Shown piece by piece: positions 1-33,475 of a DNA stretch of 33,725 nt. Each line of letters opens with the position of its first letter. Within the stretch, counting starts at the first letter, position 1. Under the pieces are notes generated by a model. That model was given only the letters and a program-made list of their open reading frames with translations, searched no databases and was not told the origin of the DNA. The position numbers and the translations under genes are program-made. Origin of the DNA: Leidyana gryllorum EB-2025a (taxonomy: Eukaryota; Protista; Apicomplexa); NCBI GenBank assembly GCA_048772705.1, contig JBLWGC010000108.1, positions 1 to 33,725 on the forward strand. Reading direction: 5' to 3'.

Positions 1-207
1 AAGCCCCACTTACACGGGAGTGTCTCCGGCTCCACACGTGCCGGCCGGCCAGCGGAGACGGAGACACGCAGTATACACACACGTTTTTGAGTGAACATTT
101 TGAGTGAACGACAACTTACTGAAACTAATAACACGACTACAATGCACCTAAGATCAAAGAAACAGCGACTCAGCCCCGATAGCAGAACGGGGACGATGCC
201 CGTTACA
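1..207 (+). repeat. 5' LTR of element A (truncated by window edge)
   Basis: Matches 4834-5041 except a G/A substitution near 71 and one missing G in the G-run near 190; ends TTACA. Confidence 0.95.
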
Positions 208-1209
208 CTGGTAGCAGTGCGTACTCAACTACAACGAAGGAGAACGACGCGGCAGTGCACGATGACGCGGATCCTGATTTGCAACACGACGATGACAACG
301 GCGGCAATACCCCTCCCACAGAGGAAACGCAAGGCCTACAAGAACCACTACAGCAGAGTGACAAGCCGGCTCGGAAACAGGAGCGGAAACGACATGCGAG
401 AAGACTGCACAAGGATAACGAACAGCTGAAGGAAGCGCGCATGGCATTCAAGGGCCACAATCTGTTCACGGGCGGCAAAGAGTATCGGGCCAGGGACTGG
501 ATAGATACGTGCCGAGCCAAATTCTTGGCCAACAGAATAACGGATGACGCAGCCAAGGTTCAGATCGCTAGTACATTACTGGCGAACTCGGCCGCACGCT
601 GGCTACTGAACAATGAGGGAGTGATTCAAGGCACCTTGGGACGACTTCGCGCGCAGACTGATAGACGAATTTGACCCGTGCAGCGTAGTTGATACCGACA
701 TGACAAAAATGATGAAACTTACAAAAACGGACTCCATGGAAGCATACGTACTGGAATTCTGTTCCCTCAACCGAGGTATTGATGCTGCCATCGACCAACA
801 AACGAGGGTTAACATGTTCTTCGATGGCCTGCCATCCGAAGACCGAATGGCATTGGCTGCTTACACCACAGAACCACTGGAAATTGTATGCCGACGGGCA
901 CTAGTGTACAGCGTGACAGTGGGACGAAACAAGCGACCAATGGAACACTGCTTCGCCATGGAAGCGCGAAAGATCGCCCGAGTGGGCAAGAATTGTCCAT
1001 TCACTCACGAGCAGTGCATTCGCGAGAGGAGATGTTTCAACTGTGGGCAAACGGACCACACGGCCTGGAAGTGCCCATTACCGCGTGATGACAGGAGACC
1101 GGAGAGAAGGCCTGGCACCAACGTCAATAGAATGGGCGAACAACGACGTGTATTTTCGATTGCAGAGGATTTTCCGCAGTCTCAAGGCGCACTGGCCAAC
1201 CGCACTTGA
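142..1209 (+). pseudogene. gag: gag of A with two apparent 1-nt frameshifts (~190, ~630); CCHC zinc knuckle
   Basis: ATG142 MHLRSKK; restoring the G seen in the 3' LTR gives ...DARYTGSSA into ORF 255-674; ORF 700-1209 has CFNCGQTDHTAWKC; homologous to intact gags at 18812 and 27989. Confidence 0.85.
209..222 (+). promoter_or_regulatory. Primer-binding site (tRNA-iMet type) of A
   Basis: TGGTAGCAGTGCGT 1 nt after the LTR end; the same core follows five other LTRs. Confidence 0.9.
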
Positions 1210-1224
1210 GAGAACTCGTTGGCC
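1167..1224 (+). promoter_or_regulatory. Predicted -1 ribosomal frameshift signal (G GAT TTT + H-type pseudoknot)
   Basis: Heptamer 1167-1173 in gag frame; stem TCTCAAG(1180-86)/CTTGAGA(1205-11); loop GGCCAAC(1194-1200) complementary to GTTGGCC(1218-24); -1 frame is open into pol. Confidence 0.85.
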
Positions 1225-2569
1225 CGCGAGCACCACCACTGACGGCTAACTGGTACATGAGTCATCCCAACCCACGAAGCACACCCGTCCCCGCATGTGT
1301 ACTTATAGACACAGGCGCGTCGATAGCTTGCATAGATACGAATGCAGCAAGGAAGCTTTCCTTGGAGCCTAGTGGGGACTTCGTGAACATCGCCGCCCTG
1401 TATCAAACGCAAAGGAAACCACTTACACACGTACGGATCGAGACGCATGAAGGACAGACAGTTGGCGTGAAGGCAGCCATGGTGGAAGGTTTACCATACG
1501 ACATAATAATACCAACAGCTGTGATAATTCACCTAGGCCTTTGTATAGGAACCGACGTCACAAGGAACTTGTGCATACTTGAACGAAGAGTGATTCCAAT
1601 TGACAAGAGACGGAGTGTCGAATGGACTAAACCCAACAGCGAAGGCGCAGAGGTGAACGCATTAAGAGTCACCGAGCAACCAATGGAGGAAACCCATATC
1701 GATATTCCCAGGGAGGAAGAGGACTTGATCAAATTGTTTGCTCGCATATTCACGGAACCAACAGGCCTACCACCCAGGCCCCAGAACATAGACCATGACA
1801 TCACGCTCATAGACCCCAACTGCACTCCGTTTGTCCGCCAACCATATAAGATTCCCCAGAAGCATATCGGAGAAATGCGGCGCCAAATCATAGAACTCGC
1901 GGAGAACGGCAAAATCACACTCAGTAGCTCCAGTTGGGCCTCGCCGTGTATGTTCGTGCCCAAGAAAGACACGGCGGTGCCACGACTGGTCTGCGACTAT
2001 CGAGCACTGAACAATGCCACAAAAAAGGTGGCCTCACCTCTCCCAGCAATAGAGGACGCCATACAGATCTTGGGGGGAGCGGAATGGTTCTCCATCCTCG
2101 ACCTAAAGGCGGGATATCATCAGATTAGAATGACGGAACAAGCACAAAAACTCACGGCATTTGCGACTCCATGGGGCCTGTTTGAGTGGACCGTTATGCC
2201 GAACGGCCTGACGAATGCCCCCGCAACGTTCATGACACTCATGAACCAAACGTTCCATGGACTTCTTGGACACTGCGTCTTCGTCTATTTAGACGACGTC
2301 CTGATATACTCTCCTAGTCGGACACGACATAGAACGGACCTGCAAGAAGTTTTCACACGGCTCGACCGAGCAACCTTACGAGTACACCGCAGGAAATCCC
2401 ACTTCTTCAAAACACGCATCGAGTACATCGGACACCAGATCGAAGCTGGATGCATCTCACCAATTCCCCAAAAAGTGGATGGACTATGTGAGATCCATCA
2501 CCCGACAACGTTGAGGGAACTCCAGCGCTTCCTCGGAATGTTTAATTACTACCGGAAGTTCATACCGAA

Positions 2570-2807
2570 TGTAACCCCGGTTCCCACAGGTCGCCATGGC
2601 GTCGGGTTGACGGCTAAGCCGCCGGCTGCTGCGTAGCTCCAATGGCATGGTACGTTCGTTAGTAAGCTTTGAAATGACTAATCTGTGTTTGTAGATCGCG
2701 CGTCTCCGTGTGTGCCCGGTCTACCGGCCTCGGAGACACCCTCTAATGATGCTGATCCAGCTGCGGCTGGTCAGTGACTAACTAAACTAAAAGTGTCCTT
2801 GTCTACA
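2570..2807 (-). mobile_element. Solo LTR S1 (238 bp) with TSD CCGAA
   Basis: CCGAA at 2565-2569 and 2808-2812; minus-strand termini TGTAG...TTACA; contains the GTCTCC/GGAGAC motif and gag start MPLELRSSRR...GY (ATG 2648). Confidence 0.92.
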
Positions 2808-4830: not shown

Positions 4831-5041
4831 TGTAAGCCCCACTTACACGGGAGTGTCTCCGGCTCCACACGTGCCGGCCGGCCAGCGGAGACGGAGACAC
4901 GCAATATACACACACGTTTTTGAGTGAACATTTTGAGTGAACGACAACTTACTGAAACTAATAACACGACTACAATGCACCTAAGATCAAAGAAACAGCG
5001 ACTCAGCCCCGATAGCAGAACGGGGGACGATGCCCGTTACA
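4831..5041 (+). repeat. 3' LTR of element A (211 bp)
   Basis: TGTAAGCCCC...CCCGTTACA; direct repeat of the window start. Confidence 0.95.
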
Positions 5042-6586: not shown

Positions 6587-6810
6587 TATAACCTGGCGGT
6601 CCGTTCTCGTTGCCATCGAGATTGGTAAGTGATCTGCTACGTAATTCCATGTTTCTTAGGTGTGTGTTGTTCGTGTTCCCCCCGCGTCTCCGTGCCGGTG
6701 CCGGCCCGCATGGAGACACAGAGATGCTGGTAAGCTGGACTGGCTTTGCCAGACAGTGATATGCAACTAAACATGACACTGGTCTACACTGGTGGCGGCT
6801 ATCCGCTACA
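6587..6810 (-). repeat. 3' LTR of H (224 bp, TGTAG...TTATA)
   Basis: Preceded by GGAGGAG; pol stop TAG lies within TGTAG; holds gag start MELRSRS...PGY (ATG 6650). Single copy, so boundaries are inferred by analogy. Confidence 0.82.
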
Positions 6811-7070: not shown

Positions 7071-7426
7071 TGTAATGGCCATCGGTTCCGTGGGCGTTGT
7101 CGGTGAGTTCTCGGCCACTACGTAATTGCATCTTAGATACTTCGTTCGCAGGTTCAGTGGTCATGCCGGTCGGTTCGCACGTAATCAAAAAGGTGAGTTC
7201 ACACGATGATCTGGCTTGTGTCCCCCCGTGTCTCCGGCCGGCCGGCCGGCACGCCGGAGACACAGACACGATCAGGACGGCTGGCTTCGGTTGGACGTCG
7301 TCAAACGCCTCGGTGACGAAGTAGCCTTCCCCCGACGGTGGTGCCTTGGGTCGGTTCTAGCGTCGGGGCTCTATCGAGGAGCGGTGTTCGTTGCGACGAT
7401 GTCGGCATTGGCTCTAAAGTGTTACA
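7071..7426 (-). mobile_element. Solo LTR S2 (356 bp) with TSD GCGGG
   Basis: GCGGG at 7066-7070 and 7427-7431; TGTAA...TTACA; gag start MQLRSGRE...HY (ATG 7131). Removal restores FHVSRLTRYNGDPPAETAPVYLMDK. Confidence 0.92.
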
Positions 7427-10538: not shown

Positions 10539-10800
10539 TGTAACCTGACTCTAAGGCCGGGTTCGTAGTGCTCAGGTGAATGCTTCGTCCGCTACGTAAA
10601 ACCATTGTTGTTCCAATGCAGGCACGTGAAAGGTAAGTCACAAAGGTACGTCTAATCTAGAGTCTATATATGTGTCTCCGTTAATGCCGGTGCCGGCCGG
10701 CCGGAGACGGAGACACACACACTGGTGAACCGGTCCCGGCCGGTCACCGATGAGCGTCCTCCTTGCAGTAACTATCCGTGTAACCGTTCTAACGGTTACA
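10539..10800 (-). mobile_element. Solo LTR S3 (262 bp) with TSD GGGGG, related to D-family LTR
   Basis: GGGGG at 10534-10538 and 10801-10805; TGTAACC...GGTTACA; gag start MVLRSGRS...GY (ATG 10605); U3 similar to 18014-18110. Confidence 0.92.
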
Positions 10801-10810
10801 GGGGGTGCGG

Positions 10811-10989: not shown

Positions 10990-11180
10990 TGTAAGGTGAA
11001 CATCTATCACCGGCGACCCGGAGGCCGGCCGGCACGTGGACCCGGAGACGGAGACAGGGAGAGTACAAACACGCACGTGTTTCAGTATTAGTTTTTTCGA
11101 GTGACTTACCTGCACAATGAACAACGAACTACAAAACCAGTCCATTAGCTCGGGACCAGCAGCGGAGAAGGCGGGTTACA
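10990..11180 (+). repeat. 5' LTR 'X' (191 bp) followed by PBS and a gag stub
   Basis: TGTAAGG...GGTTACA, then C + TGGTAGCAGTGCG (11182-11194); ATG 11117 reads MNNELQ...AGYTGSSAPRYEQLP. Confidence 0.88.
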
Positions 11181-11216
11181 CTGGTAGCAGTGCGCCTCGT
11201 TACGAACAACTACCCT

Positions 11217-11425
11217 TATAACCGGGGGGTAGGTCCGGTGGGGATTGGTCTAGGTTCTGTCCTATCTGTTTGCCGTTCCTAAGCTGTAGCATAGTTAGAT
11301 CTGTTGTTTCACTGTTCATGCACTCCGGTTCCAAAAAAGGTTCGTGTGTTTCGTGTCTGTTTGTTTACGTCTCCGTCTCCGGGTTTCCGGTCATGCCGGT
11401 CTGCCGGTGATGGTCTTCGGTTACA
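11217..11425 (-). repeat. 3' LTR of C (TGTAA...TTATA)
   Basis: Direct repeat of 15700-15908. Confidence 0.95.
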
Positions 11426-11438
11426 CTCTTCCCCCTCT

Positions 11439-14789: not shown

Positions 14790-15775
14790 GACTCGACTTC
14801 ATCCGCTTCTTCCGTCATCTCGGTGTCCGCTAGGTGTACCGTGGCCGCCTGGAAAGCCCTGGCCTTGCCTCCTTGTCTGATCTGTTGTGGTCCTGATCCC
14901 CGCTTCGGACACTTGGCCGAGATGTGCCCACCTTGGCCACATATGTAGCAGAGGTTGTTCCTGCTACAATACTCCCGCGTATGGGGATTCTGCAGGCCCA
15001 CTCCTCGTTTGGTAGCCACCAATACCCTCTGCGTTTGAGGGGGGTCCTCCGGACACAGTGTTAGCACCAGTGCGACCGCTGCCGTCACTGTCTTCGGGTT
15101 CCGTCCTCGGATTGCCAGTTGTTCCGCCTTGGGGAGCCGCCCGAGGAAGAGATCCACAAGATCGGGTTCGGGAATGCTGCGGATCATACGGCGTGCCTGT
15201 CGGAAGGCCAAGGCGAATTGGCGAAGTCGTCCATTTTCCACGCGTAGTTCAACAAGCCTTGCTAAGCTCCCACGTTTGTCGGACTCGAATTCGCTAACTA
15301 CCAGCCTTCTGAAGTGCTCCCAGTCGACCCTTCGGATGTCCTCCAAGGTCGCATTCGCCCATGCAGAGGCGCCTCCGCGGAACGTTCCGCATGCCACAGC
15401 TGGCCAGTGCGCCTTCGGCAGAGCTGCATTGCGAAAACAATTCTCCAGCGTATCCAGGTGAAGATTCGGATCCGTGTCGCCATCGAACGGGCCCGCCACT
15501 TGCACTGTGGTCCGTATCCAGCTCATCACCCGCAACGCCATGTCCATTCCGCTGTGTAATTCTCCGTTTGTGGTCTTCCCGTGATCTGTTTGCTTCGCGA
15601 TCGTCTTCGAAGCGTCGTCTGATAGGGATTCCACCGCCGTTTCAGGGTCATCGTGCAAGTTTTTGTCCTCCGTCAGATCATTTGCCGCACTGCTACCAGT
15701 ATAACCGGGGGGTAGGTCCGGTGGGGATTGGTCTAGGTTCTGTCCTATCTGTTTGCCGTTCCTAAGCTGTAGCAT
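14780..15775 (-). CDS. gag: Gag of C (alternative in-frame ATG at 15802)
   Basis: MLQLRNGK...GYTGSSA; CYICGQGGHISAKC; ends SDF*. Confidence 0.92.
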   Translation of the reverse strand: MLQLRNGKQIGQNLDQSPPDLPPGYTGSSAANDLTEDKNLHDDPETAVESLSDDASKTIAKQTDHGKTTNGELHSGMDMALRVMSWIRTTVQVAGPFDGDTDPNLHLDTLENCFRNAALPKAHWPAVACGTFRGGASAWANATLEDIRRVDWEHFRRLVVSEFESDKRGSLARLVELRVENGRLRQFALAFRQARRMIRSIPEPDLVDLFLGRLPKAEQLAIRGRNPKTVTAAVALVLTLCPEDPPQTQRVLVATKRGVGLQNPHTREYCSRNNLCYICGQGGHISAKCPKRGSGPQQIRQGGKARAFQAATVHLADTEMTEEADEVESDF

Positions 15776-15908
15776 AGTTAGATCTGTTGTTTCACTGTTC
15801 ATGCACTCCGGTTCCAAAAAAGGTTCGTGTGTTTCGTGTCTGTTTGTTTACGTCTCCGTCTCCGGGTTTCCGGTCATGCCGGTCTGCCGGTGATGGTCTT
15901 CGGTTACA
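15700..15908 (-). repeat. 5' LTR of C
   Basis: Followed on the minus strand by C + TGGTAGCAGTGCG. Confidence 0.95.
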
Positions 15909-18213
15909 ACCCTTCCCCAACACCCTGAAAGAACTCCAGAGCATATTGGGTATGATGAATTACTACCGGAGATTCATCCCCGGCTTCGCAAGACTGGCAA
16001 ACCCACTCTACGAATTGAGTCATGGGCTGAAGAAACCGAACTCACCAATTACAGCAACTCAGGCGGCCGAAGAAGCGTTCAAGGGACTCAAAACAGCACT
16101 GGCGAACACACGACCCCTCCAGTTTCCGGACATACAAATAAAGGAATTAACCCTGGACACAGACGCCAGTCTTACGGCGATAGGGGGGGTACTCCAACAA
16201 CCGACCTCGCAAGGATTGGCACCAATCGAGTTCTTCTCCAAAGCTCTGACAGCGACCCAGAGCCGCTACCCCACACACGAACGAGAATTACTCGCCATCG
16301 TGGAATCCTGCAAACATTGGCGCCACCTCCTAGTCGGAAGAAGAATCACGATTCGAACAGATCACAAGCCACTAACGTACCTCCTGACGCAAGCGCATTT
16401 GTCCGACAGACAAGCAAGATGGATGGTCAGACTCGCGGAGTTGGATATACACTTTGAATATATAAAGGGCGCCCAAAATATTATAGCCGATTTACTTAGC
16501 CGACCCCGAACCAACACCACCCTAACCGACAGACCAGCGATTCAACCAGAGACGGTACACAGCACCGTCCCAGGGAACAATGAAGAAGAGCCCGTCAGCA
16601 CGGACCTTGAAACACGCCTCCGCCATGCGTGGAGCAACCGACGAGAGGAAGCCGGCAAGTGCGGAACACCCGAATGGATTGAAGGGCTACCGGTGACACC
16701 GCAAGGTACCATAGAAGTTCCCCCGGACGAGGAGTTGATACGAGCCATCGTGAAAGACAATCACGACAGTACGCTGGCCGGGCACTTGGCAGCGGATAAG
16801 ACGATCGGACGGGTGAGATCATTGTTCAGCTGGAAAGGAATGGCTGCTGATATAATCGAGTATTGTCGCACTTGCGACACTTGCCAGAAGGCGAAGAAGA
16901 GGACGCATAGACCACACGGTTTACTACACCCAATCAGCAACCCCAGCCTCCCATGGGTGGAAGTGGGCGTTGACTTCCTGGAAATGCCGAAGGTTTCGGA
17001 GAACGACTCGGATTACATCATGGTTGTGGTGGATAGACTCTCGAGGCGACTCAGACTTCTACCCTGCAGGAAACGCATAACAGCAAGCCAATCAGCCGCC
17101 CTGTTCCTAGAGAACATAGTGAAAGTGCACGGAGCCCCCCGCAAGATCATATCTGACCGAGATCCTAGGTTCGTCAGCGAAATGTGGCAAGGGATAATGA
17201 AAGGCTTAGGAGCGAACCTAGCATTCTCAACGGCGTACCACCCCCAATCGAATGGATTGGTGGAACGAAACAACAGATCAACGCTTCAACTGATCCGATG
17301 CGCACTCCACGCACACGGTGGGAAATGGCAGGACCATCTACTAGCAACGGAAATGGCGTACAACTCAACGATCCAGTCCTCGACCAACATGTGCCCACTC
17401 GAACTGGACACTGGACGAACCACGTTTATTCCCACAAATCTGAACGAGATAACCTCCACCCGATCGGTCGCAGGACGACTGTATCTGCAGAAACTGCAGG
17501 AAGCCAACGATAGACTCAGACTAGCCAGTCTACAGCAGAAGGAACACGCAGACAAGAGGAGACAAGAGGTAAGCTTCCGAGAGGGCGACCTGGTACTTCT
17601 GAACACTAACGGACTGGCACACCTACCTAAGAACAAGCTCTCTTTACCATTTTGCGGACCTTTCAGGATCATAGAAGCCACTACTCATGATACATACCTC
17701 TTAGACTTACCAAGCACGTGGGGATTATACCCCAAGTTTCACGCAAGCAGACTAGAACCCTATAGACAACGGGACGAACCTGCAGAAACACCTACACCCG
17801 AAGAACTCTACATAATGGAATCGATTCAAGGATGGCGCGAAACGGCAGACGGAATAGAATACCTAGTCAGCTGGGCAGGCTACACCGACCGCAGCTGGGA
17901 GAAGGCATCAACGGTCTTGGAGGCCGAAGGAGCAGATCTAATTGAAGCATTCCGAAGAAGATGGAACCAGAGGAACCCCCGCACTCCGTTCACCCATGAT
18001 GATGGGGGAGGGATGTAAGGGGGACGCTCATCGGTGACTGGCCGGGACCGGTTCACCCGTGTGTGTGTCTCCGTCTCCGGGCCGGCCGGCTCCGGCATTA
18101 ACGGAGACACAGAGATCAACTTTTAGATTCGAACTTACCTTTTGAGTGCCTGCTTGCCATGGACTTACGCTCTAGAACAATAGCCGTAGCTTCGACGACT
18201 GGAAAGAATTATA
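15909..18213 (+). mobile_element. 3' half of D-family element (D1): RT C-terminus-RH-IN-chromodomain + 3' LTR
   Basis: Near-identical to 21174 onward (offset 5265); translated protein is identical in the ORF track; LTR 18014-18213. Confidence 0.95.
18014..18213 (+). repeat. 3' LTR of D1 (200 bp, TGTAA...TTATA)
   Basis: Identical by eye to 18667-18866; preceded by PPT GGGGGAGGGA. Confidence 0.95.
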
Positions 18214-18666: not shown

Positions 18667-18866
18667 TGTAAGGGGGACGCTCATCGGTGACTGGCCGGGA
18701 CCGGTTCACCCGTGTGTGTGTCTCCGTCTCCGGGCCGGCCGGCTCCGGCATTAACGGAGACACAGAGATCAACTTTTAGATTCGAACTTACCTTTTGAGT
18801 GCCTGCTTGCCATGGACTTACGCTCTAGAACAATAGCCGTAGCTTCGACGACTGGAAAGAATTATA
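18667..18866 (+). repeat. 5' LTR of D2
   Basis: TGTAAGGGGG...GAATTATA then C + PBS. Confidence 0.95.
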
Positions 18867-19921
18867 CTGGTAGCAGTGCGTCGTTCCTCGCGGCTGACAA
18901 CGACGATATGGAAGGGAACGCCCCCCATAGCACGAACCCGACGAAGCCACGAGGAACGGACGGCACGCACCGTGACATACCGACCACACCACCTTCGGAA
19001 CTCACTGCCGACAGCGAACAACACGCCAAGATGTGGCGGCAGATAGCGGATACACTTAACCAGGCGCTCCAATGCCCCGCAAGGAAGGAAGTACACACGG
19101 ACACGCACGATCAAATCTTGACCAAAGCCGAAAAGGCCTTAAAGAAGCAACCACAATTCGACGGAACAGAGTCGAAGTCCGCCCGGGATTGGATCGACAG
19201 TTGCGCCGCTTGCTTCGCAGCGGCCAGGATCACCGATGACGCGGTCAGGATCCAAGCGGTGTGCTCCACCTTCAGCGGCGTAGCAGCCAGGTGGTTTATG
19301 GCCAGAATTGAGTTACTTGACGCTTCATGGGAGGACTTTTATACAACATTTCTTAAGGAATTCGACACGGAGGGCAGCATCATGTCCGACATGGCTCGGC
19401 TGTCGCTGCTGAAGAAGACAAGTAGCATGGGGACGTACGTTGCGGAATTCAAGAAACTGAGTCGCGGAATACCTAAAGCCATTGATCGAGAAACGAGAGC
19501 GCAGCTATTCTTCATGGGCCTACCCACGGCGGACCGAGTAGCACTCTCGGCTTGTCTGAGCGAAGAGATGGACACGATTTACCAGAGGGCCTTACAGTAT
19601 GGATTACTCAGCTCGTACAACAAACCAACCGAACATTGCTTAGCCACCAATGAACACAGAGGAACGAGGGTAGGACAGCGATGCAGATACAGTCACGAGG
19701 AGTGCGTACAACAACGACGTTGCTTCAATTGCGGATCCCAAGACCATGTGGCATTCCGATGCCAACACCCCCGCGATGACAAAAGAACGAAACGACCAGC
19801 GCCTTCACATAGCCAGGAGAGGAGAGAACCGCCCAGACGCGTCTTCGCCACGATTCCACAGGATTTTATGGAAACCCCGGAATCCTTGGCACCGATTCTG
19901 AACGGGGAAGCGAAGCCTTAG
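18812..19921 (+). CDS. gag: Gag of D2 (369 aa)
   Basis: MDLRSRT...NYTGSSA; CFNCGSQDHVAFRC. Confidence 0.95.
   Translation: MDLRSRTIAVASTTGKNYTGSSASFLAADNDDMEGNAPHSTNPTKPRGTDGTHRDIPTTPPSELTADSEQHAKMWRQIADTLNQALQCPARKEVHTDTHDQILTKAEKALKKQPQFDGTESKSARDWIDSCAACFAAARITDDAVRIQAVCSTFSGVAARWFMARIELLDASWEDFYTTFLKEFDTEGSIMSDMARLSLLKKTSSMGTYVAEFKKLSRGIPKAIDRETRAQLFFMGLPTADRVALSACLSEEMDTIYQRALQYGLLSSYNKPTEHCLATNEHRGTRVGQRCRYSHEECVQQRRCFNCGSQDHVAFRCQHPRDDKRTKRPAPSHSQERREPPRRVFATIPQDFMETPESLAPILNGEAKP
18868..18885 (+). promoter_or_regulatory. 18-nt PBS of D2
   Basis: TGGTAGCAGTGCGTCGTT, shared exactly with E and G. Confidence 0.92.
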
Positions 19922-23283: not shown

Positions 23284-23338
23284 GGGGGACGCTCATCGGT
23301 GACTGGCCGGGACCGGTTCACCCGTGTGTGTGTCTCCG

Positions 23339-23507
23339 TGTAAGCCCCGGTAGGGGGAATGCGACGGCTGCGTAGGTCCATTTTTGGTTCTGTTCCCAGT
23401 TCGGGTTGTGTCCCTCCCTTGTTTGTAGCTACTGTCATGCACGCTCGAAAAACCTATGCTTTTTGTGTGTCCCACACATGTTTGGCTCTTCGGCTTAGCC
23501 TGCTACA
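23339..23507 (-). repeat. 3' LTR of E (TGTAG...TTACA)
   Basis: Direct repeat of 27947-28115; preceded by AGGGGAGGGG. Confidence 0.95.
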
Positions 23508-26500: not shown

Positions 26501-26976
26501 TCTATTGTCCACACTTGAAGTGGTATTGGTGTTGTTGCTTCTCCGCCTCTGATGGCCGCATTCTCCACCATCTCGAGATTTTGCCCGTCCGCTGTGCCTA
26601 TTCTCAGTCTGAGTTGCGCTATGGATTGGGTGGGTAGTATGACATCGTGTGTCAAGGTACGGAAGACTGCCGCTTCCATATCTAGACGTTGTCCTTGCCT
26701 CGTGTGGAGTGTCAGGTATACCGTTTCATGCCTAAGTGATGCGTGTGCGGATTGGATTGTGGTTTGCCGGCCGGTTGATTCTAGTCGCAGTCGGCTCGCT
26801 ATTTCTGCTCTCACACAGCCTATGGTTGCCCCTGTGTCAATGAGCACTTCGACAGGCAGTCGTCCTGTGCCATCGTCGGTTCGGCTTATCGTCCACGTTG
26901 TGGTGAGCAATGGCGTTTTCAATTGATCGCCTCTTGTTGGGGTGTCGCCAGCTGCCCCGAGGCTGAGGGAAAATCC
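23503..26976 (-). CDS. pol: Pol of E, entered by predicted -1 frameshift
   Basis: GGATTTT 26976-26970, open into the 1139-aa ORF; LIDTGA, YLDD, ADAS, HHCC/DDE, GPF, YLVKWAGY; stop TAG in LTR TGTAG. Confidence 0.95.
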   Translation of the reverse strand, partial: GFSLSLGAAGDTPTRGDQLKTPLLTTTWTISRTDDGTGRLPVEVLIDTGATIGCVRAEIASRLRLESTGRQTTIQSAHASLRHETVYLTLHTRQGQRLDMEAAVFRTLTHDVILPTQSIAQLRLRIGTADGQNLEMVENAAIRGGEATTPIPLQVWTIETEKGARTGEPEAPMEPGEIDIPPNEATILDDFPQLMPDQLPTPPERPGIDHKIELKADTVPYVSRPYRVPQHYIKEMHRQITELTKAGQIEPSNSSWASPAMFVPKKETTTPRLVCDYRRLNQATVRTASPLPSIEDATLCLAGAQWFSSLDLKSGYYQVRVAPESRYLTAFATPWGLYEWKVMPNGLTNAPATFMRLMNSVFQDIIGIFAFVYLDDVLIFSKTREEHRIHLRIALERLQQHGLVIHKRKSHFFKQSIDYVGHRFEAGGIRPLRSKLDALEGLVYPKKLKDLQRVMGILNYYRRFVRDFAARANPLYQLSHKLSKPGDPVEDTPSARAAFEDLKEALRQAPRLQYPDPHATELTITADASLTAVGAILEQTINGEVLPIEFMSLTLTPAQSRYATHDRELLAIVSACRHWRHLLLGRKVRVKTDHKPLTFLLRQAHLSDRQIRWLITLTELDISIEYIPGTQNVLADLLSRPHQQRVDEVNSLGTSTRIPDGGTPTASPGQGSQSDQTLEEVGIEAQLRNHWSTHKEDAGKDVNIEWVAGLPVTAEGTIEVPNVPTLIRCIIQDNHDSPLAGHLAADKTAARIRSLFHWRGLMADVIAYCSSCHACQKAKRRNHKPYGLLHPLSNPSRPWVEIGLDFLELQADEETGHDYVMVVVDRLTRRVRLTPCRKTITAEEAAQLFLREIVKIHGLPRKMVSDRDVRFTSTMWQSMMTSLGVNLAMSTARHPQTNGLVERANRSILQILRCTLEAHGGNWMAHIVPTEMAYNSAVQSSTHTSPLELDTGRATFISHNLAELASTRSQMGRTYLQKLQEAHDRLTHAAEMQKKSADRKRQPRELQEGQLVLLDTRNLAHIAKSKLAPTYCGPFQVLKKTSADTYLVDLPESWGILPNFHISRLEPYKSREGQCVPTGETETYYIMQEVVGWRETPTGIEYLVKWAGYDDQTWESAQKLQEAEATDLVEKFREQWNRQNPKQPFTADTSSLGRGGV

Positions 26977-27989
26977 CGCTCCTCCATCGTAAATACGCGT
27001 CGGCGGGGTGTTTGCTGTGTGTAGTTATCCACTCGTCCAAATTTGTTGTTCCTGCGGTCATCCCGCGGGTACCTGCAGCGCCAGGCTGAGTGGTCATCTG
27101 CTCCACAATTGAAACAGCGCTTTTCCCGTATACATTGCTCGTACGTATATTTGCATCGTTTCCCCACTCGCCCGGTTCCATTCGTTATACTAAAACAGTG
27201 TTCGTTGGTGGGCGCTGCTCTCTTGACTCTCCCTATGGCTGTTTCGTACTGCAATGCGCGTGTGCATAGCGTGTCGAGATCACATCCCACGAATTGAGCC
27301 AGAGCCATGCGGTCTGCCGCCGGAAGTCCTCGGAAGAACAGGTTTGTTCTGGTGCTGTCGGCTATGCAGTCGGGCACTCCTCTGTTGAGCGCTCGGAACT
27401 GATTGACGTATGTGGCCATAGAGTCCGTTTTCGATAAGGTTGTGAGCCGCACTAAGTCGTCTTCCAGAGTCTCCGCTGTATCGAATTCCTGAATTATCGC
27501 TCGGCTGAATTCTTCCCAGCTCGCCTGTTTGATGGCCGGCCTGCTCAGTAGCCAGCGAGCAGCTGAATGAGTGAGAAGTCCGCATGCGGTATTCACTTTG
27601 TATCGGTCTTCTGTAACGTCATGTGCCAAGAACTTGGCCGAACAACTGTCTATCCAATCCCGCCCCCCAATCTTGGCTGTCCCGTCGAAGCTATCGTGCT
27701 TCCTCAATGCCAGCTCCGCCCTTCTTTGTTGGTCCGGCGGGTGTGACACCTCACCTCCGTTCGCCTGTGCCGACGTCGCTGTCGTCAGGAAGAGTCTGAG
27801 TGTATCCCAGAGGGCTTGAATGGGGACGTTGCCCGTAAGTGCTTCTGTCGGCGGTGTCAAGGTCCCTTGCGGACCTTTCGTTGCTTCCATGCCTGTGCCG
27901 CTCGGCATGTCGTTTGTTTCGTTCGGTAACGACGCACTGCTACCAGTGTAAGCCCCGGTAGGGGGAATGCGACGGCTGCGTAGGTCCAT
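26919..27989 (-). CDS. gag: Gag of E (alternative upstream in-frame ATG at 28046)
   Basis: MDLRSRR...AYTGSSA; CFNCGADDHSAWRC. Confidence 0.93.
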   Translation of the reverse strand: MDLRSRRIPPTGAYTGSSASLPNETNDMPSGTGMEATKGPQGTLTPPTEALTGNVPIQALWDTLRLFLTTATSAQANGGEVSHPPDQQRRAELALRKHDSFDGTAKIGGRDWIDSCSAKFLAHDVTEDRYKVNTACGLLTHSAARWLLSRPAIKQASWEEFSRAIIQEFDTAETLEDDLVRLTTLSKTDSMATYVNQFRALNRGVPDCIADSTRTNLFFRGLPAADRMALAQFVGCDLDTLCTRALQYETAIGRVKRAAPTNEHCFSITNGTGRVGKRCKYTYEQCIREKRCFNCGADDHSAWRCRYPRDDRRNNKFGRVDNYTQQTPRRRVFTMEERDFPSASGQLATPQQEAIN

Positions 27990-28115
27990 TTTTGGTTCTG
28001 TTCCCAGTTCGGGTTGTGTCCCTCCCTTGTTTGTAGCTACTGTCATGCACGCTCGAAAAACCTATGCTTTTTGTGTGTCCCACACATGTTTGGCTCTTCG
28101 GCTTAGCCTGCTACA
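27947..28115 (-). repeat. 5' LTR of E
   Basis: Followed by C + 18-nt PBS on the minus strand. Confidence 0.95.
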
Positions 28116-28260
28116 CTCCGTCTCCGGGCCGGCCGGCTCCGGCATTAACGGAGACACAGAGATCAACTTTTAGATTCGAACTTACCTTTTGAGTGCCTGC
28201 TTGCCATGGACTTACGCTCTAGAACAATAGCCGTAGCTTCGACGACTGGAAAGAATTATA

Positions 28261-29797
28261 ACCACGATAGCGATCTGGCGGGGCATCTAGCCGCTGACAA
28301 AACGATAGGACGAGTGAAAGCAATGTTCACCTGGAGAGGGCTACCGATGGATGTCGCGAACTACTGCAGGACATGCGACAGATGTCAAAAAGCAAAGAAA
28401 CGGGGCCATCGGCCATACGGCCTTCTCCACCCGCTTTCGAACCCGACTCTACCATGGACGGAAGTCGGCATCGATTTTTTGGAACTGCCCAAGGACGCGG
28501 ACACAGGACAGGACTACCTTATGGTAGTCATAGATCGGCTGACGCGCCGAATACGCTTGATTCCCTGCACGAAAACGATCAACGCGAAGGAGACGGCGGA
28601 GCTGTTCCTGGAGCATGTGGTCAGAGTACATGGAGCACCCATGAAAATCGTTTCAGACAGAGACAGCAGATTTCTGGCAGAGGTATGGCGGACGATGACG
28701 GAAAGTATAGGAGCACGCTTGGCGATGAGCACTGCGTACCACCCGCAGTCAAATGGGCTGACGGAACGAACAAATAGATCAATATTGCAGATATTACGAT
28801 GTGTGCTGAACGGCCACGGAGAGAAATGGACGAGACATATCATCAGCACAGAAATGGCTTATAACTCAGCCAATCAAGCATCGACGGGTCAACGCCGCTG
28901 GAATTAGACACGGGGAGGACTACGTTCCTACCGTCTCAATTGAGAGAACTAGCATCGACGAGATCAACACTGGGGAGGCTACAACTCCAGAAATTGCAGG
29001 AAGCAACGGATAGGCTAGCCGACGCCAGGAGAAGGCAGAAGAATCAGGCAGACAGGCGACGTGAACAGGTAAAGTTCAAGACAGGAGATTATGTACTCCT
29101 GAACACGAAGAACTTAGCACATGTACCGACCAACAAGCTGTCCATCCCCTTCTGCGGACCATTTAGAGTGACAAGAGTAGGAACAAATGACACTTACACA
29201 TTGGACCTCCCACCAGGGTGGGGAATATTCCCAACCTTCCACATTAGCAGGCTAGAGAAGTATAACGACAGATGGAGAGAAACGAACCCCCAACCACATA
29301 TTCCGAGCGATACAGAACCCAAGGAACCCGAAGAGGAACTCTATATCATGGAGGCTATCAGAGGATGGAAACCCACTGAAAACGGAATTCTCTACAAAGT
29401 CAAATGGTTGGGGTACTCTCGCGAGACTTGGGAACCAGCCGAGGAGGTATTGGCGGCTCAAGGAGCCGACTTGATCGAAGACTTCAGATGCGAATGGAAC
29501 AGGAGAAACCCGACCAACCCATTCGCAGTAGACACAGCCAATCCACTGCACGAACCCGCGCGGCGGGGAGGGGTGTAAGAAGCACAGACGAAAGGAACTG
29601 TCAGCAGCCGGCCGCAACCGGTCTACTAAGAAGTCTGTGTCTCGGGGACCGGTCCGGCCGGCCGGGGAGACACGGACACGCGAACACACACTGTTTTTTG
29701 AGTGACTACGTGCGATACGAACTGGTATAAGACATGGACTTACGAAACGGCAAGGTGCTAGGCGCCATGACAACGAACACGGGCAAGCCGTGTTACA
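28261..29797 (+). mobile_element. 3' fragment of element 'F': integrase-chromodomain + 3' LTR
   Basis: HDSDLAGH..CDRC, DDE, GPF, YKVKWLGY; 1-nt frameshift near 28888; PPT GGGGAGGGG; LTR 29574-29797. Confidence 0.92.
29574..29797 (+). repeat. 3' LTR of F (224 bp, TGTAA...TTACA)
   Basis: Follows the PPT; holds gag start MDLRNGK...PCY (ATG 29734); single copy. Confidence 0.87.
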
Positions 29798-32444
29798 CTG
29801 TCCGCGTGTCAGGTGGGAGTTCCAGGAAATCCATATGCACTTCGACCCAGGGTTGTGATGGGATGTTTAGTGGGTTCAGGAGGCCGAGGGGGCGGTGGCG
29901 TCGTTGCTTACCCAATTGGCATGTCTGGCATTGTCGGCAAAACTGGGCTACGTCGTTCGTCATCCCAGGCCAGGTGAAGGTGGCTCGGATCCTATTTGCC
30001 GTCTTTTGCGGTCCGTAGTGGCCGGCGGTAAGTGTTGAGTGGGCCTCGCCTATGATTTGGGAGATCAATCCCGGGTCGAGTGGGACTTCGATACAGCCGT
30101 CTTCGGTGATGGGCAGGTTGGCGACCCAACGGACTGGTCCGCATGCTCCGGCTTGGTTCTGTCTGGTGCGCCATGCTTCAAGTAGGCTGCTATGTATCTG
30201 GGGCAGTTGATTGTCGACGGGAGGTTCACGGGAAAAATTATTTTGCGGCTCGGAAGGGTCGTTCGTGGCGGGGCTATGTTCGTCGGCGGTGTTCGTCCGA
30301 TTTTGCGGCTCGGAAGGGTCGTTCGTGGCGGGGCTGTGTTCGTCGGCGGTGTTCGTCCGATTTTGCGGCTCGGAAGGGTCGTTCGTGGCGGGGCTGTGTT
30401 CGTCGGCGGTGTTCGTCCGATTTTGCGGCTCGGAAGGGTCGTTCGTGGCGGTGTCGGTGTTCGTCGGCGGTGAATCGCTCACGTCGGTACTTCGTAACGG
30501 ATTTATGCGTGTCGTCAGCGAGAGGACTCGCGCGGTATTCCTCTCCTCTGTCGGCTTATTCGGTCGGCTGAGTAAGTCGGCGATGATGTTATCGCAGCCT
30601 TTCACGTATTCGAACTCGAGATGGTACTCAGCTAAGGTGATTAACCACCGTGCCTGTCGGTCTGACAAGTGTGGCTGCTTCATCAGGTATATCAAGGGGC
30701 GGTGGTCCGTATGGACTCTTATTTCACGGCCCACTAGCAGCTGTCGCCAGTGTCGGACCGCGAAGACCACTGCGAGGAGTTCCCTCTCGTGGGTCGGGTA
30801 GCGTTGCTCGACATCGGTCAGAGCGTGTGAGAAGAAGTCGGCCGGTTTCCGCATCTTCCCTGCCTCTTCCTCGTATTCGAGGGTCGCTCCGATTGCCCGA
30901 GCACTGGCGTCTGTGTGTAGGTGTAGTGTGGTTGCGTGGAGCGGTATGTAACCGAGGGTAGGTGCCGCGAGGAGTAGTGACTTCAGGTTGGTCCACGCTG
31001 TTGTGATACTGTTGTCGGATTGGATAGGGGCTTTGGGGTCCTTTAGGCCCGTCATGGCCTCATATAATGGGGCGGCGACCCTTGCAAAGTTTGGGACGAA
31101 TCGGCGGTAGTAATTGACCAGGCCAAGTGCGCTTTGCGTTTCGCGGAGAGTGGTAGGTACGGGTATATTTTCGATTGCTTCACATTTGGTCCTTAGTGGT
31201 TTGATTCCCTCGGCGGAGATGGTATGCCCCACGTAATCGACTTCGTCTAGGAAGAACCTTGATTTCCGCCGATGGACGATGAGCTGGTGATGGTTCAAAC
31301 GGGAGAAAACGTCTATCAGGTGAGTGCGGTGGGATTCGAAATCTGTGCTGAACACTAAGACGTCGTCTAGGTAGACGAACACAAACTCTCCAATGATGTC
31401 GCGAAAGACGAGATTCATGAGAGACATGAATGTGGCTGGGGCATTGCACAATCCGTTTGGCATGCTGACCCATTCAAAGAGACCCCACGGAGTCGTGAAA
31501 GCGGTGAGTGCGCGGCTGGAAGGGTGAACTCTGACTTGGTGGAAACCGCTTTTGAGGTCGAGCGTGCTGAAGACGCGCGCTCCGTTCAGGACCATTAGGG
31601 CGTCGTGGAGATTCGGCATGGGGTAGGCGGCTTTGACTGTGCGTCCGTTAAGTGCTCGATAGTCACATACGAGGCGGGGTGTTGTGGTATCTTTCTTGGG
31701 CACGAAGAGGCAAGGTGAAGCCCATGTGGACGTCGAGTGCGTGATCTTCCCTTCCTCGAGTAAGGTAAATAATTGTTCCTTCATTTCCCGTATGTATACT
31801 TGTGGCACGCGGTAGGGGGGTCTGGCGTATGCTGGGGCGTGGACGTTCGTGAGGGTGATGCGGTGGTCGATTCCTGGGCGGACTGGGGGGGTAGGAGGTT
31901 GTTCGAGAAAGACCGCGGGGAAGCGTTCGGCGAGAAACAATGCCTTCTCCGGGATGGGGACTCGCACAGGTGGCGGCACTCCTGTCGAGGGGAGGTCGTG
32001 GCGCGTCGGCAGGTCAGACGGGGGTATTCTCGCTACGTGTACGGAGGTGCGGTGGGTGACTATGCGGAGTCGTTCATTTCCCGTTTCTATTTTTATGCGT
32101 GCTCTGATTATATCTGGGGTACCCAGAATGAGGTCGTATGTGGCTTGAGGTACCACCAAAGCCGTGATTGTGAGCGGCGGTCTGGCGGGGAGGTGGAGAG
32201 TAAGTATGGCGGAAGCTGAGGTGGTTTCCTCGGACCACAGTCCCTTGATTTGGACGTGGGAAGATTGTGTAGGGAGTTGAAGTTGTTCAACAACGTGTTT
32301 GCAGACGCAGCTGGCCTCTGCCCCAGTGTCGACCAGGATGACGGCTCGGGGCAGCTGCGTGTCCTTCCAGGGGTGGCTTATCGGCCAGACGGCAGTGAGC
32401 GCCCGACCTACTTGGGCATTTCGGTCGGGCCTAGCGGAAAATCC
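29798..32444 (-). pseudogene. pol: pol of G, open but truncated within the integrase core
   Basis: LVDTGAE, YLDD, TDAS, HSTLTAGH..CQTC, ends MDFLELPPDTRT at the F LTR. Confidence 0.92.
30241..30451. repeat. 60-bp tandem repeat (~3.5 units) inside G pol
   Basis: ttttgcggctcggaagggtcgttcgtggcggggctgtgttcgtcggcggtgttcgtccga at 30241, 30301, 30361 and partial at 30421; encodes ATNDPSEPQNRTNTADEHSP. Confidence 0.97.
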
Positions 32445-33475
32445 GAAACGGTCATGTCTTGAGTATCGGCCTCGATGACGTGGACTCGGCGAGTTTTCGT
32501 TGGTTGCAGCGGTCGTGGTTGGTGAGGAGGTCTCTTGCGGTCGTCCCTGGGTTGAGGGCAGGCTGCGGAGCGGTGTTCGTTGCTCCCACAGTTGAAGCAT
32601 CGCCGTTCTTCTACACACTGGGTGTAAGAGAAGGGGCAACGGGATCCTACAGATCCACCACTTGGTGTGACTCTGTAGTGGAAGACGTCGGCGGTCGTAG
32701 AGCGGTTACCGACACGTTCAGCCCACTCCAGGGCGCGTCGTGCGGCTTCCTCGAAGGTCACTGACAGGTTGGCGGCCACGAGTTGATCGTCTGACGCGGG
32801 AAGTCCGCGATAGAACATCTTTACCAGTAGGTCATCTGGTACTGTCTGGGGTATGGCTCGGCGGAGTCTACGGCTCTCGTCTACGTATTCCTGCATTGAT
32901 GCTGTCTTTCGCGGGTTTACGAAGCGCGTGAATGGGTCGTCCGAGGTGGATCGGGGGGCGAATTCTTTGATGAAGGCGGTTTTGAAGTGTTCCCACCCTT
33001 GTTCTGGTAGGTCGGGTAGCGTTAGGGCCCATTGAGCGGCAGAACCGTGGAGATATGAGCAAGCCCACGCCGCGCGATGTTCTTCGGGGGTATGGCGGGT
33101 CCTGAACCTCAGTGAAATCGCGTCCAGCCACTCCTGTGCTTCTCTACGGCGTCGTCCATCAAATGGTTGCATGTTCTTCAGGGGATCTTGTCCGTCGGTG
33201 AAGGGGTGAAGTTGTGTGGATACAGCTGGCGGTGGTGGACTTGTCGGGGGTGCCGGTCCGGGGGCGCTGGGTTTGGCTGCGTTCGTCTTCAGCAGAGTAA
33301 GAATTTCGAGCATCGTGTGGTTCAGGGCATCTAAGCTGACCGAGCTGTCTAGGTGAGTTGTGGATAGGGATTCGGCTGAAGCGGATGTTGGTTCTTTAGG
33401 CGGGTGCGTGGCTTCCAACGACGCACTGCTACCAGTTTCAGCCCCGTGGGCTCCTGTTGATCGTTTTGTAGGCAT
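32408..33475 (-). CDS. gag: Gag of G
   Basis: MPTKRST..AETGSSA; CFNCGSNEHRSAAC; SDFP at the frameshift site. Confidence 0.92.
   Translation of the reverse strand: MPTKRSTGAHGAETGSSASLEATHPPKEPTSASAESLSTTHLDSSVSLDALNHTMLEILTLLKTNAAKPSAPGPAPPTSPPPPAVSTQLHPFTDGQDPLKNMQPFDGRRRREAQEWLDAISLRFRTRHTPEEHRAAWACSYLHGSAAQWALTLPDLPEQGWEHFKTAFIKEFAPRSTSDDPFTRFVNPRKTASMQEYVDESRRLRRAIPQTVPDDLLVKMFYRGLPASDDQLVAANLSVTFEEAARRALEWAERVGNRSTTADVFHYRVTPSGGSVGSRCPFSYTQCVEERRCFNCGSNEHRSAACPQPRDDRKRPPHQPRPLQPTKTRRVHVIEADTQDMTVSDFPLGPTEMPK

What the first reader, a model, noticed from the sequence alone, without database searches (positions are those of the whole stretch)
142..33475. LTR-encoded Gag N-terminal M-x-L-R-S-G-like motif resembling the LANA/IL-33 nucleosome acidic-patch anchor
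Seen: gag N-termini are otherwise unalignable, yet begin MHLRSKK (142), MPLELRSSRR (2648-), MELRSRS (6650-), MQLRSGRE (7131-), MVLRSGRS (10605-), MLQLRNGK (15775-), MDLRSRT (18812), MDLRSRR (27989-) and MDLRNGK (29734). G has only MPTKRST and X lacks the motif. Codons differ (CTA AGA TCA, TTA CGT AGT, CTT AGG AAC, TTA CGC TCT), which points to selection on the peptide. Known: KSHV LANA (MRLRSGRS) and IL-33 (MxLRSG) bind the H2A-H2B acidic patch through an arginine anchor, and foamy virus Gag uses a similar chromatin-binding sequence that affects integration. Inference: these chromoviruses may use a two-part targeting system, a Gag nucleosome tether plus the integrase chromodomain, which could explain why they pile into one another. 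The motif could alternatively be an NLS or RNA-binding tail.
Basis: partly seen in the sequence, partly recalled or inferred. Interest (0 to 1): 0.85.

Follow-up and report, generated by a model that had tools for sequence, protein, structure and literature searches.

The report
LANA-like nucleosome-anchor motif on retrotransposon Gag
Dozens of very different jumping-gene families in one small eukaryotic genome all start their coat protein, from inside the terminal repeat, with the same short peptide that herpesvirus LANA and interleukin-33 use to grip nucleosomes. This suggests, but does not prove, that these elements tether themselves to chromatin through Gag.

Summary
All nine peptides are at the given coordinates. 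The pattern occurs 13 times in the window, against 0.66 expected from shuffles.

- **Where it lies:** The Gag ATG sits inside the ~200-bp LTR, 41-95 nt before a primer-binding site complementary to the genome's own initiator tRNA. That site is read through in frame as G-S-S-A.
- **How conserved it is:** Across the 15.5-Mb genome I found 35 gag families with this primer site (median 33% identity). Of these, 27 carry L-R-[S/N], usually as M-x-L-R-[S/N]-G-[K/R]. All six Arg codons and both Ser codon boxes are used, so selection acts on the peptide.
- **Structural context:** The motif sits at the tip of a ~65-residue disordered arm.
- **Co-fold:** With the genome's own H2A-H2B the score was 0.82, against 0.00 for the best control. 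The arginine lands in the acidic triad as in LANA. This may be recall of the solved LANA complex.
- **Spread:** The motif is restricted to this clade. Among the 150 best outside Gag relatives only the nearest has it. It recurs in a Nannochloris polyprotein and one metagenomic element.
- **Status:** Nucleosome binding is plausible (about 0.45) but untested. A nuclear-import signal is the main rival. I found no published precedent in LTR retrotransposons.

The parts
18812..18832 (+). Motif MDLRSRT at the start of an intact 369-aa gag (ORF 18812-19921), inside the 5' LTR 18667-18866
18868..18880 (+). Primer-binding site complementary to the genome's initiator tRNA (17 nt match here), read through in frame as G-S-S-A
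27969..27989 (-). Motif MDLRSRR at the start of an intact 356-aa gag (26919-27989), inside the 5' LTR (about 27946-28119). Primer-binding site at 27933-27945.
15752..15775 (-). Motif MLQLRNGK at the start of an intact 331-aa gag (14780-15775), inside the 5' LTR 15686-15918. Primer-binding site at 15686-15698.
142..162 (+). Motif MHLRSKK in the 5' LTR of element A (LTR 1 to about 207, primer-binding site 209-221). This copy is out of frame with the primer-binding site because of a single-base length difference from the 3' LTR.
   Evidence: intact relatives L006 and L007
4975..4995 (+). The same motif in the 3' LTR of element A (4834 to about 5041)
2619..2648 (-). MPLELRSSRR in an LTR copy with no primer-binding site after it (solo LTR)
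6630..6650 (-). MELRSRS in a solo LTR. The same family heads a gag ORF at L010 and L001.
7111..7131 (-). MQLRSGRE in a solo LTR
10585..10605 (-). MVLRSGRS in a solo LTR. It matches LANA's MRLRSGRS at 7 of 8 positions. The same family heads a 359-aa gag at L005, which I used in the co-fold.
11272..11292 (-). 3' LTR copy (11203-11435) of the 15775 motif
18159..18179 (+). Copy of the 18812 motif in LTR 18014-18213
23361..23381 (-). 3' LTR copy (23338-23511) of the 27989 motif
28206..28226 (+). Third copy of the MDLRSRT LTR (28061-28260, about 80% identical to 18667-18866)
29734..29754 (+). MDLRNGK in an LTR copy with no primer-binding site. The same family heads a 370-aa gag at L014.
33455..33475 (-). 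Variant N-terminus MPTKRST (K-R-S in place of L-R-S) of gag 32408-33475. Primer-binding site at 33422-33434.
11117..11194 (+). Family X: LTR-encoded N-terminus MNNELQNQ without the motif, followed by the primer-binding site at 11182-11194

Best explanation
These are Ty3/gypsy chromoviruses in which gag translation starts inside the 5' LTR and runs through the initiator-tRNA primer-binding site. The LTR-encoded start of Gag carries a short linear motif: hydrophobic-x-L-R-[S/N]-G-[K/R], usually with the initiator Met as the hydrophobic residue. It sits at the tip of a ~65-residue disordered arm ahead of the capsid domain.

The most likely function is a LANA/IL-33-type arginine anchor. The Arg inserts into the H2A acidic triad, and the Leu and Met pack into the adjacent hydrophobic groove of H2A-H2B. 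This would tether Gag, or the particle or pre-integration complex that carries it, to nucleosomes, as foamy-virus Gag and MLV p12 do for retroviruses.

Shown: the anatomy, the conservation, selection at the peptide level, disorder, and sequence and model likeness to LANA.

Inferred: use of the LTR ATG, histone binding, and any role in integration or in the nesting of the elements.
For: Anatomy:
- Pfam finds capsid and zinc knuckle in gag, and PR-RT-RH-IN plus chromodomain in pol.
- The primer-binding 13-mer occurs 61 times in the genome and 0 times in the control. It is complementary to the 3' end of the genome's initiator tRNA.

Start codon:
- In about 50 of 61 sites a 250-480-aa gag ORF runs through the primer-binding site in the same frame, with an in-LTR ATG.
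- In several families the next in-frame Met lies at or beyond the start of the capsid domain.

Conservation, over the 34 of 35 families (<80% identity, median 33%) that have an anchor Arg:
- R in 34/34.
- L before it in 27/34.
- S, N or T after it in 32/34.
- G in 20/34.
- K or R in 22/34.
- A hydrophobic residue at -3 in most.
- No flanking position exceeds about 10/34.

Peptide-level selection:
- All six Arg codons, four Leu codons and all six Ser codons are used.
- The distance to the LTR end varies.

Likeness:
- MXLRSG is the published LANA/IL-33 motif (PMC4958301).
- In LANA, M6 and L8 make hydrophobic contacts and R9 is the anchor to E61, D90 and E92 (PMC9040877).
- The genome's H2A and H2B keep these residues.

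Co-fold of own H2A, own H2B and the first 32 Gag residues of the MVLRSGRS family:
- Score 0.82 against 0.00 for the best of 3 controls.
- The mark was reached by 51 of 78 solved complexes and 2 of 108 mismatched pairs.
- Runs agree in at least 76% of contacts. Partner pLDDT is at least 50.
- R4 touches H2A residues equivalent to E61 and E92. L3 and M1 lie in the H2A/H2B groove.

Disorder: residues 1-66 have pLDDT below 50.

Not a basic tail: only 2 of 35 families have K[KR]x[KR], and there are typically two basic residues in the first 12.

Recurrence elsewhere:
- A Logan contig with the same LTR, ATG and primer-site layout (TLRSS).
- Nannochloris P0005, MPVLRNGRQIG.
- P0082, with LRSGK at residue 14.
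Against: - No binding, localisation or expression data exist. No RNA run was listed, so use of the LTR ATG is inferred.
- The co-fold used the most LANA-like family. By the tool's own warning it may score from memory of the solved LANA-nucleosome complex. Peptides and disordered chains are outside its calibration.
- Position x is Asp or Glu in 14 of 34 families, whereas LANA (Arg) and IL-33 (Lys) have a base there. LANA R7 pairs with H2B E110 (PMC9040877), so an acid should weaken that contact.
- 13 of 34 families have Asn instead of Ser. About a third lack the Gly.
- Seven families have only T-R-S, K-R-[ST] or P-R-K, and one has no motif, yet all look intact.
- The motif is absent from almost all of the 150 nearest outside Gag relatives.
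Confidence: 0.45

Rival explanations
1. The motif is a non-classical nuclear-import or nuclear-pore docking signal at the Gag N-terminus, as in fission-yeast Tf1. It would bring the particle or pre-integration complex into the nucleus rather than bind histones.
For: - Tf1 is a related Ty3/gypsy element with a chromodomain integrase. The first ten residues of its Gag are critical for nuclear import and transposition (PMC7175516, citing Dang and Levin 2000).
- The motif is N-terminal, exposed and disordered, and contains Arg and Lys/Arg.
- The variant families (MPTKRST, MVKRTKRS, MPAKRSTRA) look more like short basic signals.
Against: - Only 2 of 35 families contain K[KR]x[KR]. Most have two basic residues and often one or two acidic ones in the first 12.
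- The best-conserved positions include the non-basic L, S/N and G, which a charge-based signal would not require.
- The specific match to MXLRSG would be unexplained.
Confidence: 0.2
2. The motif serves some other peptide-level function of Gag: assembly or maturation (a protease site or a p12-like capsid contact), turnover through the N-terminus, or docking to another acidic host surface.
For: - Peptide-level conservation is shown, but the partner is not.
- Met-Asp and Met-Glu starts (14 of 34) are typical substrates of N-terminal acetylation (my own knowledge).
- The acidic x position fits the acidic patch poorly.
Against: - No known processing or degron motif requires L-R-[S/N]-G-[K/R].
- In four families the motif lies 5-8 residues in from the N-terminus with the same core, so it does not depend on being the terminus.
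Confidence: 0.2
3. The motif mimics the start of the kinetochore CENP-C / KNL2 CENPC-k motif and directs the elements to centromeric nucleosomes. This would explain the nests.
For: - The plant CENPC-k motif begins KRSRSGRV/L, and grass delta-KNL2 keeps only RRLRSGKV/I (PMC9210943). This is close to LRSGKxL and LRNGKVL here.
- The elements sit in dense nests on short contigs and at contig ends.
Against: - The second half of the CENP-C-type motif (P-L-E-F/Y-W) is absent. The only downstream aromatic is a Tyr fixed by the LTR end, at a variable distance.
- Nothing shows that the nests are centromeres.
- Integrase chromodomains alone could explain the nesting.
Confidence: 0.07
4. The conservation is at nucleotide level (U5 RNA structure, a primer-activation signal or an integrase-binding site), or the ORF upstream of the primer-binding site is not translated and the resemblance is chance.
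For: - The sequence lies in the LTR near its 3' end, where cis-acting signals are expected.
- The adjacent Y-T/I-G-S-S-A really is a by-product of the LTR end plus the primer-binding site.
Against: - Codons differ at up to 6 of 9 bases between families (CTA AGA TCA against TTA CGT AGC). All Arg and Ser codons are used, and the distance to the LTR end varies.
- 33 chance matches to the same LTR-end plus primer-site 18-mer in metagenomes show no ORF or motif.
- 13 hits in the window against 0.66 expected.
Confidence: 0.04

Closest known systems
KSHV LANA residues 5-13 and the IL-33 chromatin-binding motif (MXLRSG)
   Same: The core sequence is the same: Met/hydrophobic, x, Leu, Arg, Ser, Gly, then Arg/Lys. 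It lies in an exposed, unstructured segment. The model places Arg in the H2A E61/D90/E92 pocket and Leu/Met in the hydrophobic groove (PMC9040877; PMC4958301).
   Different: - It sits on a retrotransposon capsid protein, mostly at the very N-terminus with the initiator Met as part of the motif.
- x is mostly acidic rather than basic.
- Ser is often Asn, and Gly is sometimes Arg/Lys.
- Binding is untested.
Retroviral Gag chromatin tethers: prototype foamy virus Gag chromatin-binding site and MLV p12
   Same: Both are Gag-borne peptides that bind nucleosomes and affect tethering of the incoming complex. The foamy virus site does so through an arginine anchor, R540 (PMC9040877; PMC6021111).
   Different: - The foamy virus site lies in a C-terminal Gly-Arg box, and p12 is an internal cleavage product.
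- The sequences are unrelated to L-R-S-G.
- Here the host element is an LTR retrotransposon (Metaviridae) with an integrase chromodomain.
Tf1 Gag N-terminal nuclear import signal
   Same: Same element type (Ty3/gypsy with chromodomain integrase), and a functional signal in the first ~10 residues of Gag (PMC7175516).
   Different: Tf1's signal acts in nuclear import through Nup124. I could not compare the sequences because the primary paper is not held. The motif here is not basic-rich.
CENP-C motif / KNL2 CENPC-k motif
   Same: An R-S-G-[RK]-[VLI]-type arginine-anchor start (PMC9210943).
   Different: The hydrophobic P-L-E-F/Y-W half is absent.
Ty1 (gag start inside the 5' LTR)
   Same: The gag ATG lies in the LTR, so every LTR copy carries the start of gag (my own knowledge for Ty1; shown here).
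   Different: - Ty1 is a copia-type element.
- Here the ORF also reads through the primer-binding site in a fixed frame.
- The LTR-encoded part carries a conserved docking motif.

Membership tests
Chromovirus (Ty3/gypsy LTR retrotransposon with chromodomain integrase) | Direct LTRs flanking gag and pol in the order PR-RT-RH-IN | tested here: met
   LTR pairs; Pfam domains
Chromovirus (Ty3/gypsy LTR retrotransposon with chromodomain integrase) | Chromodomain at the integrase C-terminus | tested here: met
   PF00385 at the C-terminus of three pol ORFs in the window
Chromovirus (Ty3/gypsy LTR retrotransposon with chromodomain integrase) | tRNA primer-binding site next to the 5' LTR | tested here: met
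   13-17 nt complementary to the 3' end of the genome's initiator tRNA
LANA/IL-33-type chromatin-binding motif | Sequence M-x-L-R-S-G | tested here: met
   Exact in MVLRSGRS, MQLRSGRE, MDLRSGR/K and MVLRSGK. It is relaxed (S/N, G/R/K) in the other L-R families, 27 of 35 in all.
LANA/IL-33-type chromatin-binding motif | Exposed, flexible segment | tested here: met
   Residues 1-66 have pLDDT below 50 and no secondary structure
LANA/IL-33-type chromatin-binding motif | Arginine-dependent binding to the H2A-H2B acidic patch | tested here: inconclusive
   The co-fold scored 0.82 against 0.00 for the best control, with Arg on the E61/E92 equivalents. This is a model that may recall the solved LANA complex.
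LANA/IL-33-type chromatin-binding motif | Association with chromosomes in cells | not testable with these tools
   Needs a GFP-peptide localisation experiment
CENP-C / CENPC-k motif | Arginine-anchor half followed by a conserved P-L-E-F/Y-W hydrophobic half | tested here: not met
   The first half is similar (PMC9210943). There is no conserved Trp/Phe block downstream, only an LTR-end-encoded Tyr at a variable distance.
Classical monopartite nuclear localisation signal | K-[KR]-x-[KR] core | tested here: not met
   Present in 2 of 35 families
Retroviral Gag chromatin tether (PFV Gag site, MLV p12) | Gag-borne peptide whose loss redistributes or blocks integration | not testable with these tools
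   Location on Gag is met. The functional effect needs transposition and integration-site assays.

The most novel reading that the evidence does not exclude
The LTR-encoded Gag peptide is a true nucleosome acidic-patch anchor that arose in algal or protist chromoviruses independently of herpesvirus LANA and IL-33. Together with the integrase chromodomain it reads two features of the same nucleosome (acidic patch plus methylated H3 tail), or it mimics the kinetochore CENPC-k anchor. This would steer insertions into heterochromatic or centromeric nests. It would be the first Gag-based chromatin tether in an LTR retrotransposon.
Probability: 0.15. Interest if true: 0.88.

Novelty: new variant of a known kind. 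Interest (0 to 1): 0.66.

Why it matters
Gag-mediated tethering to the nucleosome acidic patch is known for two retrovirus groups. There it governs nuclear retention and the choice of integration site. Targeting of LTR retrotransposons has so far been ascribed to integrase: chromodomains, Sir4, Pol III factors.

A LANA-type anchor kept by more than two dozen highly divergent chromovirus families would have three consequences:
- It would extend Gag tethering to the retrotransposon ancestors or relatives of retroviruses.
- It would add a striking case of molecular mimicry or convergence with a herpesvirus protein and a human cytokine.
- It would offer a simple, directly testable 7-residue handle on how these elements find chromatin.

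The anatomy is also unusual and useful for annotation. The gag start lies inside the LTR and the primer-binding site is translated in a fixed frame, so standard predictions that start gag after the primer-binding site would miss the motif.

Tried and rejected
- **Word-based homologue search with the window's gag:** no hit.
- **Homologue search with the gag part of the Nannochloris polyprotein:** only itself and one 97% copy. Its encoding contig was not on record.
- **Profile comparison of that gag with the genome's gag alignment:** no significant match. I therefore cannot say whether its motif is inherited or convergent.
- **Metagenome scan for the LTR-end plus primer-site 18-mer:** 33 hits, all chance matches with no gag ORF or motif. 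They are useful only as a negative control.
- **RNA evidence for the transcript start:** none was listed, so I did not use read laying.
- **First tRNA patterns:** they failed because the acceptor stem has G-U pairs. A looser pattern found the initiator tRNA.
- **PY-type import signal:** rejected. The Tyr is fixed by the LTR end, and the residue before it is not a conserved Pro.
- **Phosphorylation site:** rejected, because Ser is replaced by Asn in 13 families.
- **TATA boxes in the LTRs:** none found, so the transcript start stays unknown.
- **Literature searches for an arginine anchor or acidic-patch binding by an LTR-retrotransposon Gag:** nothing found.
- **Co-fold limits:** only one job was allowed. 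The Asn variants, the acid-x variants and the motif-less X and G peptides remain unmodelled.

Full report
**What is in the window.**
- The 33.7-kb window is a nest of Ty3/gypsy chromoviruses.
- Pfam finds Ty3-type capsid and zinc knuckle in the gag ORFs. It finds protease, RT, RNase H, integrase, SH3 and chromodomain in the pol ORFs.
- Short LTR pairs lie at 1-192/4834-5025, 11203-11435/15686-15918 and 23338-23511/27946-28119. The same LTR recurs at 18014-18213, 18667-18866 and, at about 80% identity, 28061-28260.
- The LTRs begin TGTA and end TTACA or TTATA. One base later comes TGGTAGCAGTGCG.
- This 13-mer occurs 61 times in the window's 15.5-Mb assembly and never in the reversed control.
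- It is complementary to the 3' end of a tRNA with anticodon CAT and the GATCGAAAC T-loop typical of initiator tRNA. About 200 gene copies are present. In the element at 18868 the match runs to 17 nt. It is therefore the primer-binding site.

**Check of the observation.**
- The pattern M-x(1-3)-L-R-[SN]-[GRKQ] is found 13 times in six frames, against 0.66 on average (maximum 5) in 200 dinucleotide shuffles. The four unlisted family copies are simply the second LTRs.
- Each ATG lies inside an LTR, 41-95 nt before the primer-binding site. The reading frame then passes through the LTR end (Tyr, then Thr or Ile) and the primer-binding site (Gly-Ser-Ser-Ala) into gag.
- The recurring YTGSSA that follows the motif is thus a by-product of the LTR end and the primer site, not a second peptide motif.
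- Only 15775-, 18812+ and 27989- head intact gag ORFs in this window.
- Five instances are solo or 3' LTR copies.
- In element A the two LTR copies differ in length by one base between the motif and the LTR end, so the 5' copy is out of frame. Intact relatives elsewhere (L006, L007) read MHLRSKK...YTGSSA into a 355-aa gag.

**Genome-wide test.**
- I fetched all 61 primer-site loci.
- In about 50 of them a 250-480-aa gag ORF runs through the primer site in the same frame, with an ATG inside the LTR.
- Clustering at 80% identity gives 35 families. Their gag proteins are only about 33% identical to each other, and a third of the pairs give no BLAST hit at all.
- Counts for each position, over the 34 of 35 families that have an anchor Arg, are given under the best explanation. 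No flanking position exceeds about 10 of 34.
- Three families have T-R-S, three K-R-[ST], one P-R-K-N-S, and one (X) has nothing.
- In four families the core lies 5-8 residues in from the N-terminus, so it does not depend on being terminal.
- All six Arg codons, four Leu codons and all six Ser codons are used, and the distance to the LTR end varies.
- Together this rules out a nucleotide-level constraint and shows purifying selection on the peptide.
- In several families the next in-frame Met lies at or beyond the start of the capsid domain, which supports use of the LTR ATG.

**Context in the protein.** An AlphaFold2 model of the 18812 gag, built on the 29-family alignment, has residues 1-66 at pLDDT below 50 with no secondary structure. 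Confident capsid helices follow at 68-269, then the zinc knuckle. The motif is therefore a short linear motif at the tip of a flexible arm.

**Likeness to known nucleosome binders.**
- MXLRSG is the published chromatin-binding motif shared by LANA and IL-33 (PMC4958301).
- In the LANA-nucleosome structure, R9 is the anchor to H2A E61, D90 and E92. M6 and L8 fill a hydrophobic pocket, and R7 pairs with H2B E110 (PMC9040877).
- The conserved Gag positions (hydrophobic -3, L -1, R 0, S/N +1, G +2, K/R +3) map onto exactly this stretch.
- The T-R-S variants recall the cytomegalovirus IE1 motif, in which T485, R486 and S487 contact the same patch (PMC9040877).
- The motif also resembles the start of the kinetochore CENPC-k motif (KRSRSGRV/L; truncated form RRLRSGKV/I; PMC9210943). 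The hydrophobic second half of that motif is absent here.

**Co-fold.**
- The genome's H2A and H2B are somewhat divergent but keep every acidic-patch residue.
- I folded H2A 14-122, H2B 28-123 and the first 32 residues of the MVLRSGRS-family Gag together. The score was 0.82 in three runs, against 0.00 for the best of three controls.
- That mark was reached by 51 of 78 solved complexes and 2 of 108 mismatched pairs. Runs agree in at least 76% of contacts. Partner pLDDT is at least 50.
- Arg4 touches the equivalents of H2A E61 and E92 and H2B E102/L103/H106. Leu3 and Met1 lie on H2A Y57/A60/E61/E64 and H2B H106/E110.
- This is the LANA binding mode.
- The tool warns that peptides are outside its calibration and that a pass can come from memory of a solved complex. 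Here that is likely, since this family differs from LANA at one position of eight. I count it as confirming the likeness, not as evidence of binding.

**How wide the motif goes.**
- A profile of 29 gag families was run against 1.84 billion representative proteins. It returned 15,213 hits.
- Among the best 150, only the nearest has the motif (P0123, at most 48% identical to any family here, from a Logan assembly). It has TLRSS, and the same LTR, ATG and read-through primer-site layout.
- The next-closest group starts with a different basic-then-acidic signature.
- Among 120 pol relatives, a Nannochloris polyprotein begins MPVLRNGRQIG and a metagenomic element has LRSGK at residue 14. By my own rough estimate from amino-acid frequencies, about 0.01 such matches are expected by chance.
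- The Nannochloris gag cannot be aligned to the gag families of this genome. Deep inheritance and convergence therefore cannot be told apart.
- The motif is a clade feature with scattered outliers, not a general chromovirus trait.

**Rivals.**
- The strongest rival is a nuclear-import or pore-docking signal. In Tf1, a related element, the first ten Gag residues are critical for nuclear import (PMC7175516). Against it, only 2 of 35 families have a classical basic core, most have two basic residues in the first twelve, and the conserved L, S/N and G are not explained.
- A point against the acidic-patch reading is that position x is Asp or Glu in 14 families, where LANA and IL-33 have a base. In addition, Asn often replaces Ser.
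- Other peptide-level roles cannot be excluded.
- Nucleotide-level constraint and chance are effectively excluded.

**Verdict.**
- The 'two-part targeting' idea is inference only.
- In the searchable literature I found no report of an arginine-anchor or acidic-patch motif on an LTR-retrotransposon Gag.
- I rate it a new variant of a known kind, namely Gag-borne chromatin tethers. It has a cheap decisive test: peptide binding to nucleosomes with R-to-A, acidic-patch mutants and LANA competition.

Noticed in passing
G000 genome-wide, e.g. L078-L081 (contig C5): About 200 near-identical initiator-tRNA genes (anticodon CAT, GATCGAAAC T-loop) in a 15.5-Mb assembly, spread over many short contigs. 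This tRNA is the primer of the chromoviruses studied here.
   Followed up: partly
window 18700-18800, 15780-15880 (-), 4860-4960: LTRs of different families share an inverted repeat of the type GTCTCCG...CGGAGAC followed by a T-run (TTTTGAGTG or CTTTTTTGG) 20-45 nt upstream of the gag ATG. No TATA box is present. This may mark the promoter or the R/U5 boundary.
   Followed up: no
window 30240-30451: Three and a half tandem copies of a 60-bp unit (99% identical) inside the region of the pol ORF 29793-32639 (-).
   Followed up: no
window 28206-28907 (+): The third copy of the MDLRSRT LTR opens a 233-aa ORF that continues beyond the LTR into foreign sequence, so an LTR-borne ATG can create fusion ORFs at solo LTRs.
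   Followed up: no
L056-L058, L061, L064 (host histone genes): The host histones are unusually divergent at their tails (H3 starts MTKTKHAARKST). There are few histone gene copies, an H2A.Z-like gene and a short CENH3-like H3 variant (L058).
   Followed up: partly
P0125-P0136 (outside relatives of gag): The next-closest Gag group in public data shares a different N-terminal signature: Met, small residue, Pro/Thr, Arg/Ile, Arg/Lys, then an acidic run ending K-E-N. This hints that Gag N-termini of this superfamily carry lineage-specific short motifs.
   Followed up: no
window 11182-11203: The element at 11203-15918 is inserted only 8 nt after the primer-binding site of family X. Another element (23338-28119) appears to be inserted in or next to the 3' LTR of its neighbour. 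I did not analyse insertion points within the nest.
   Followed up: no
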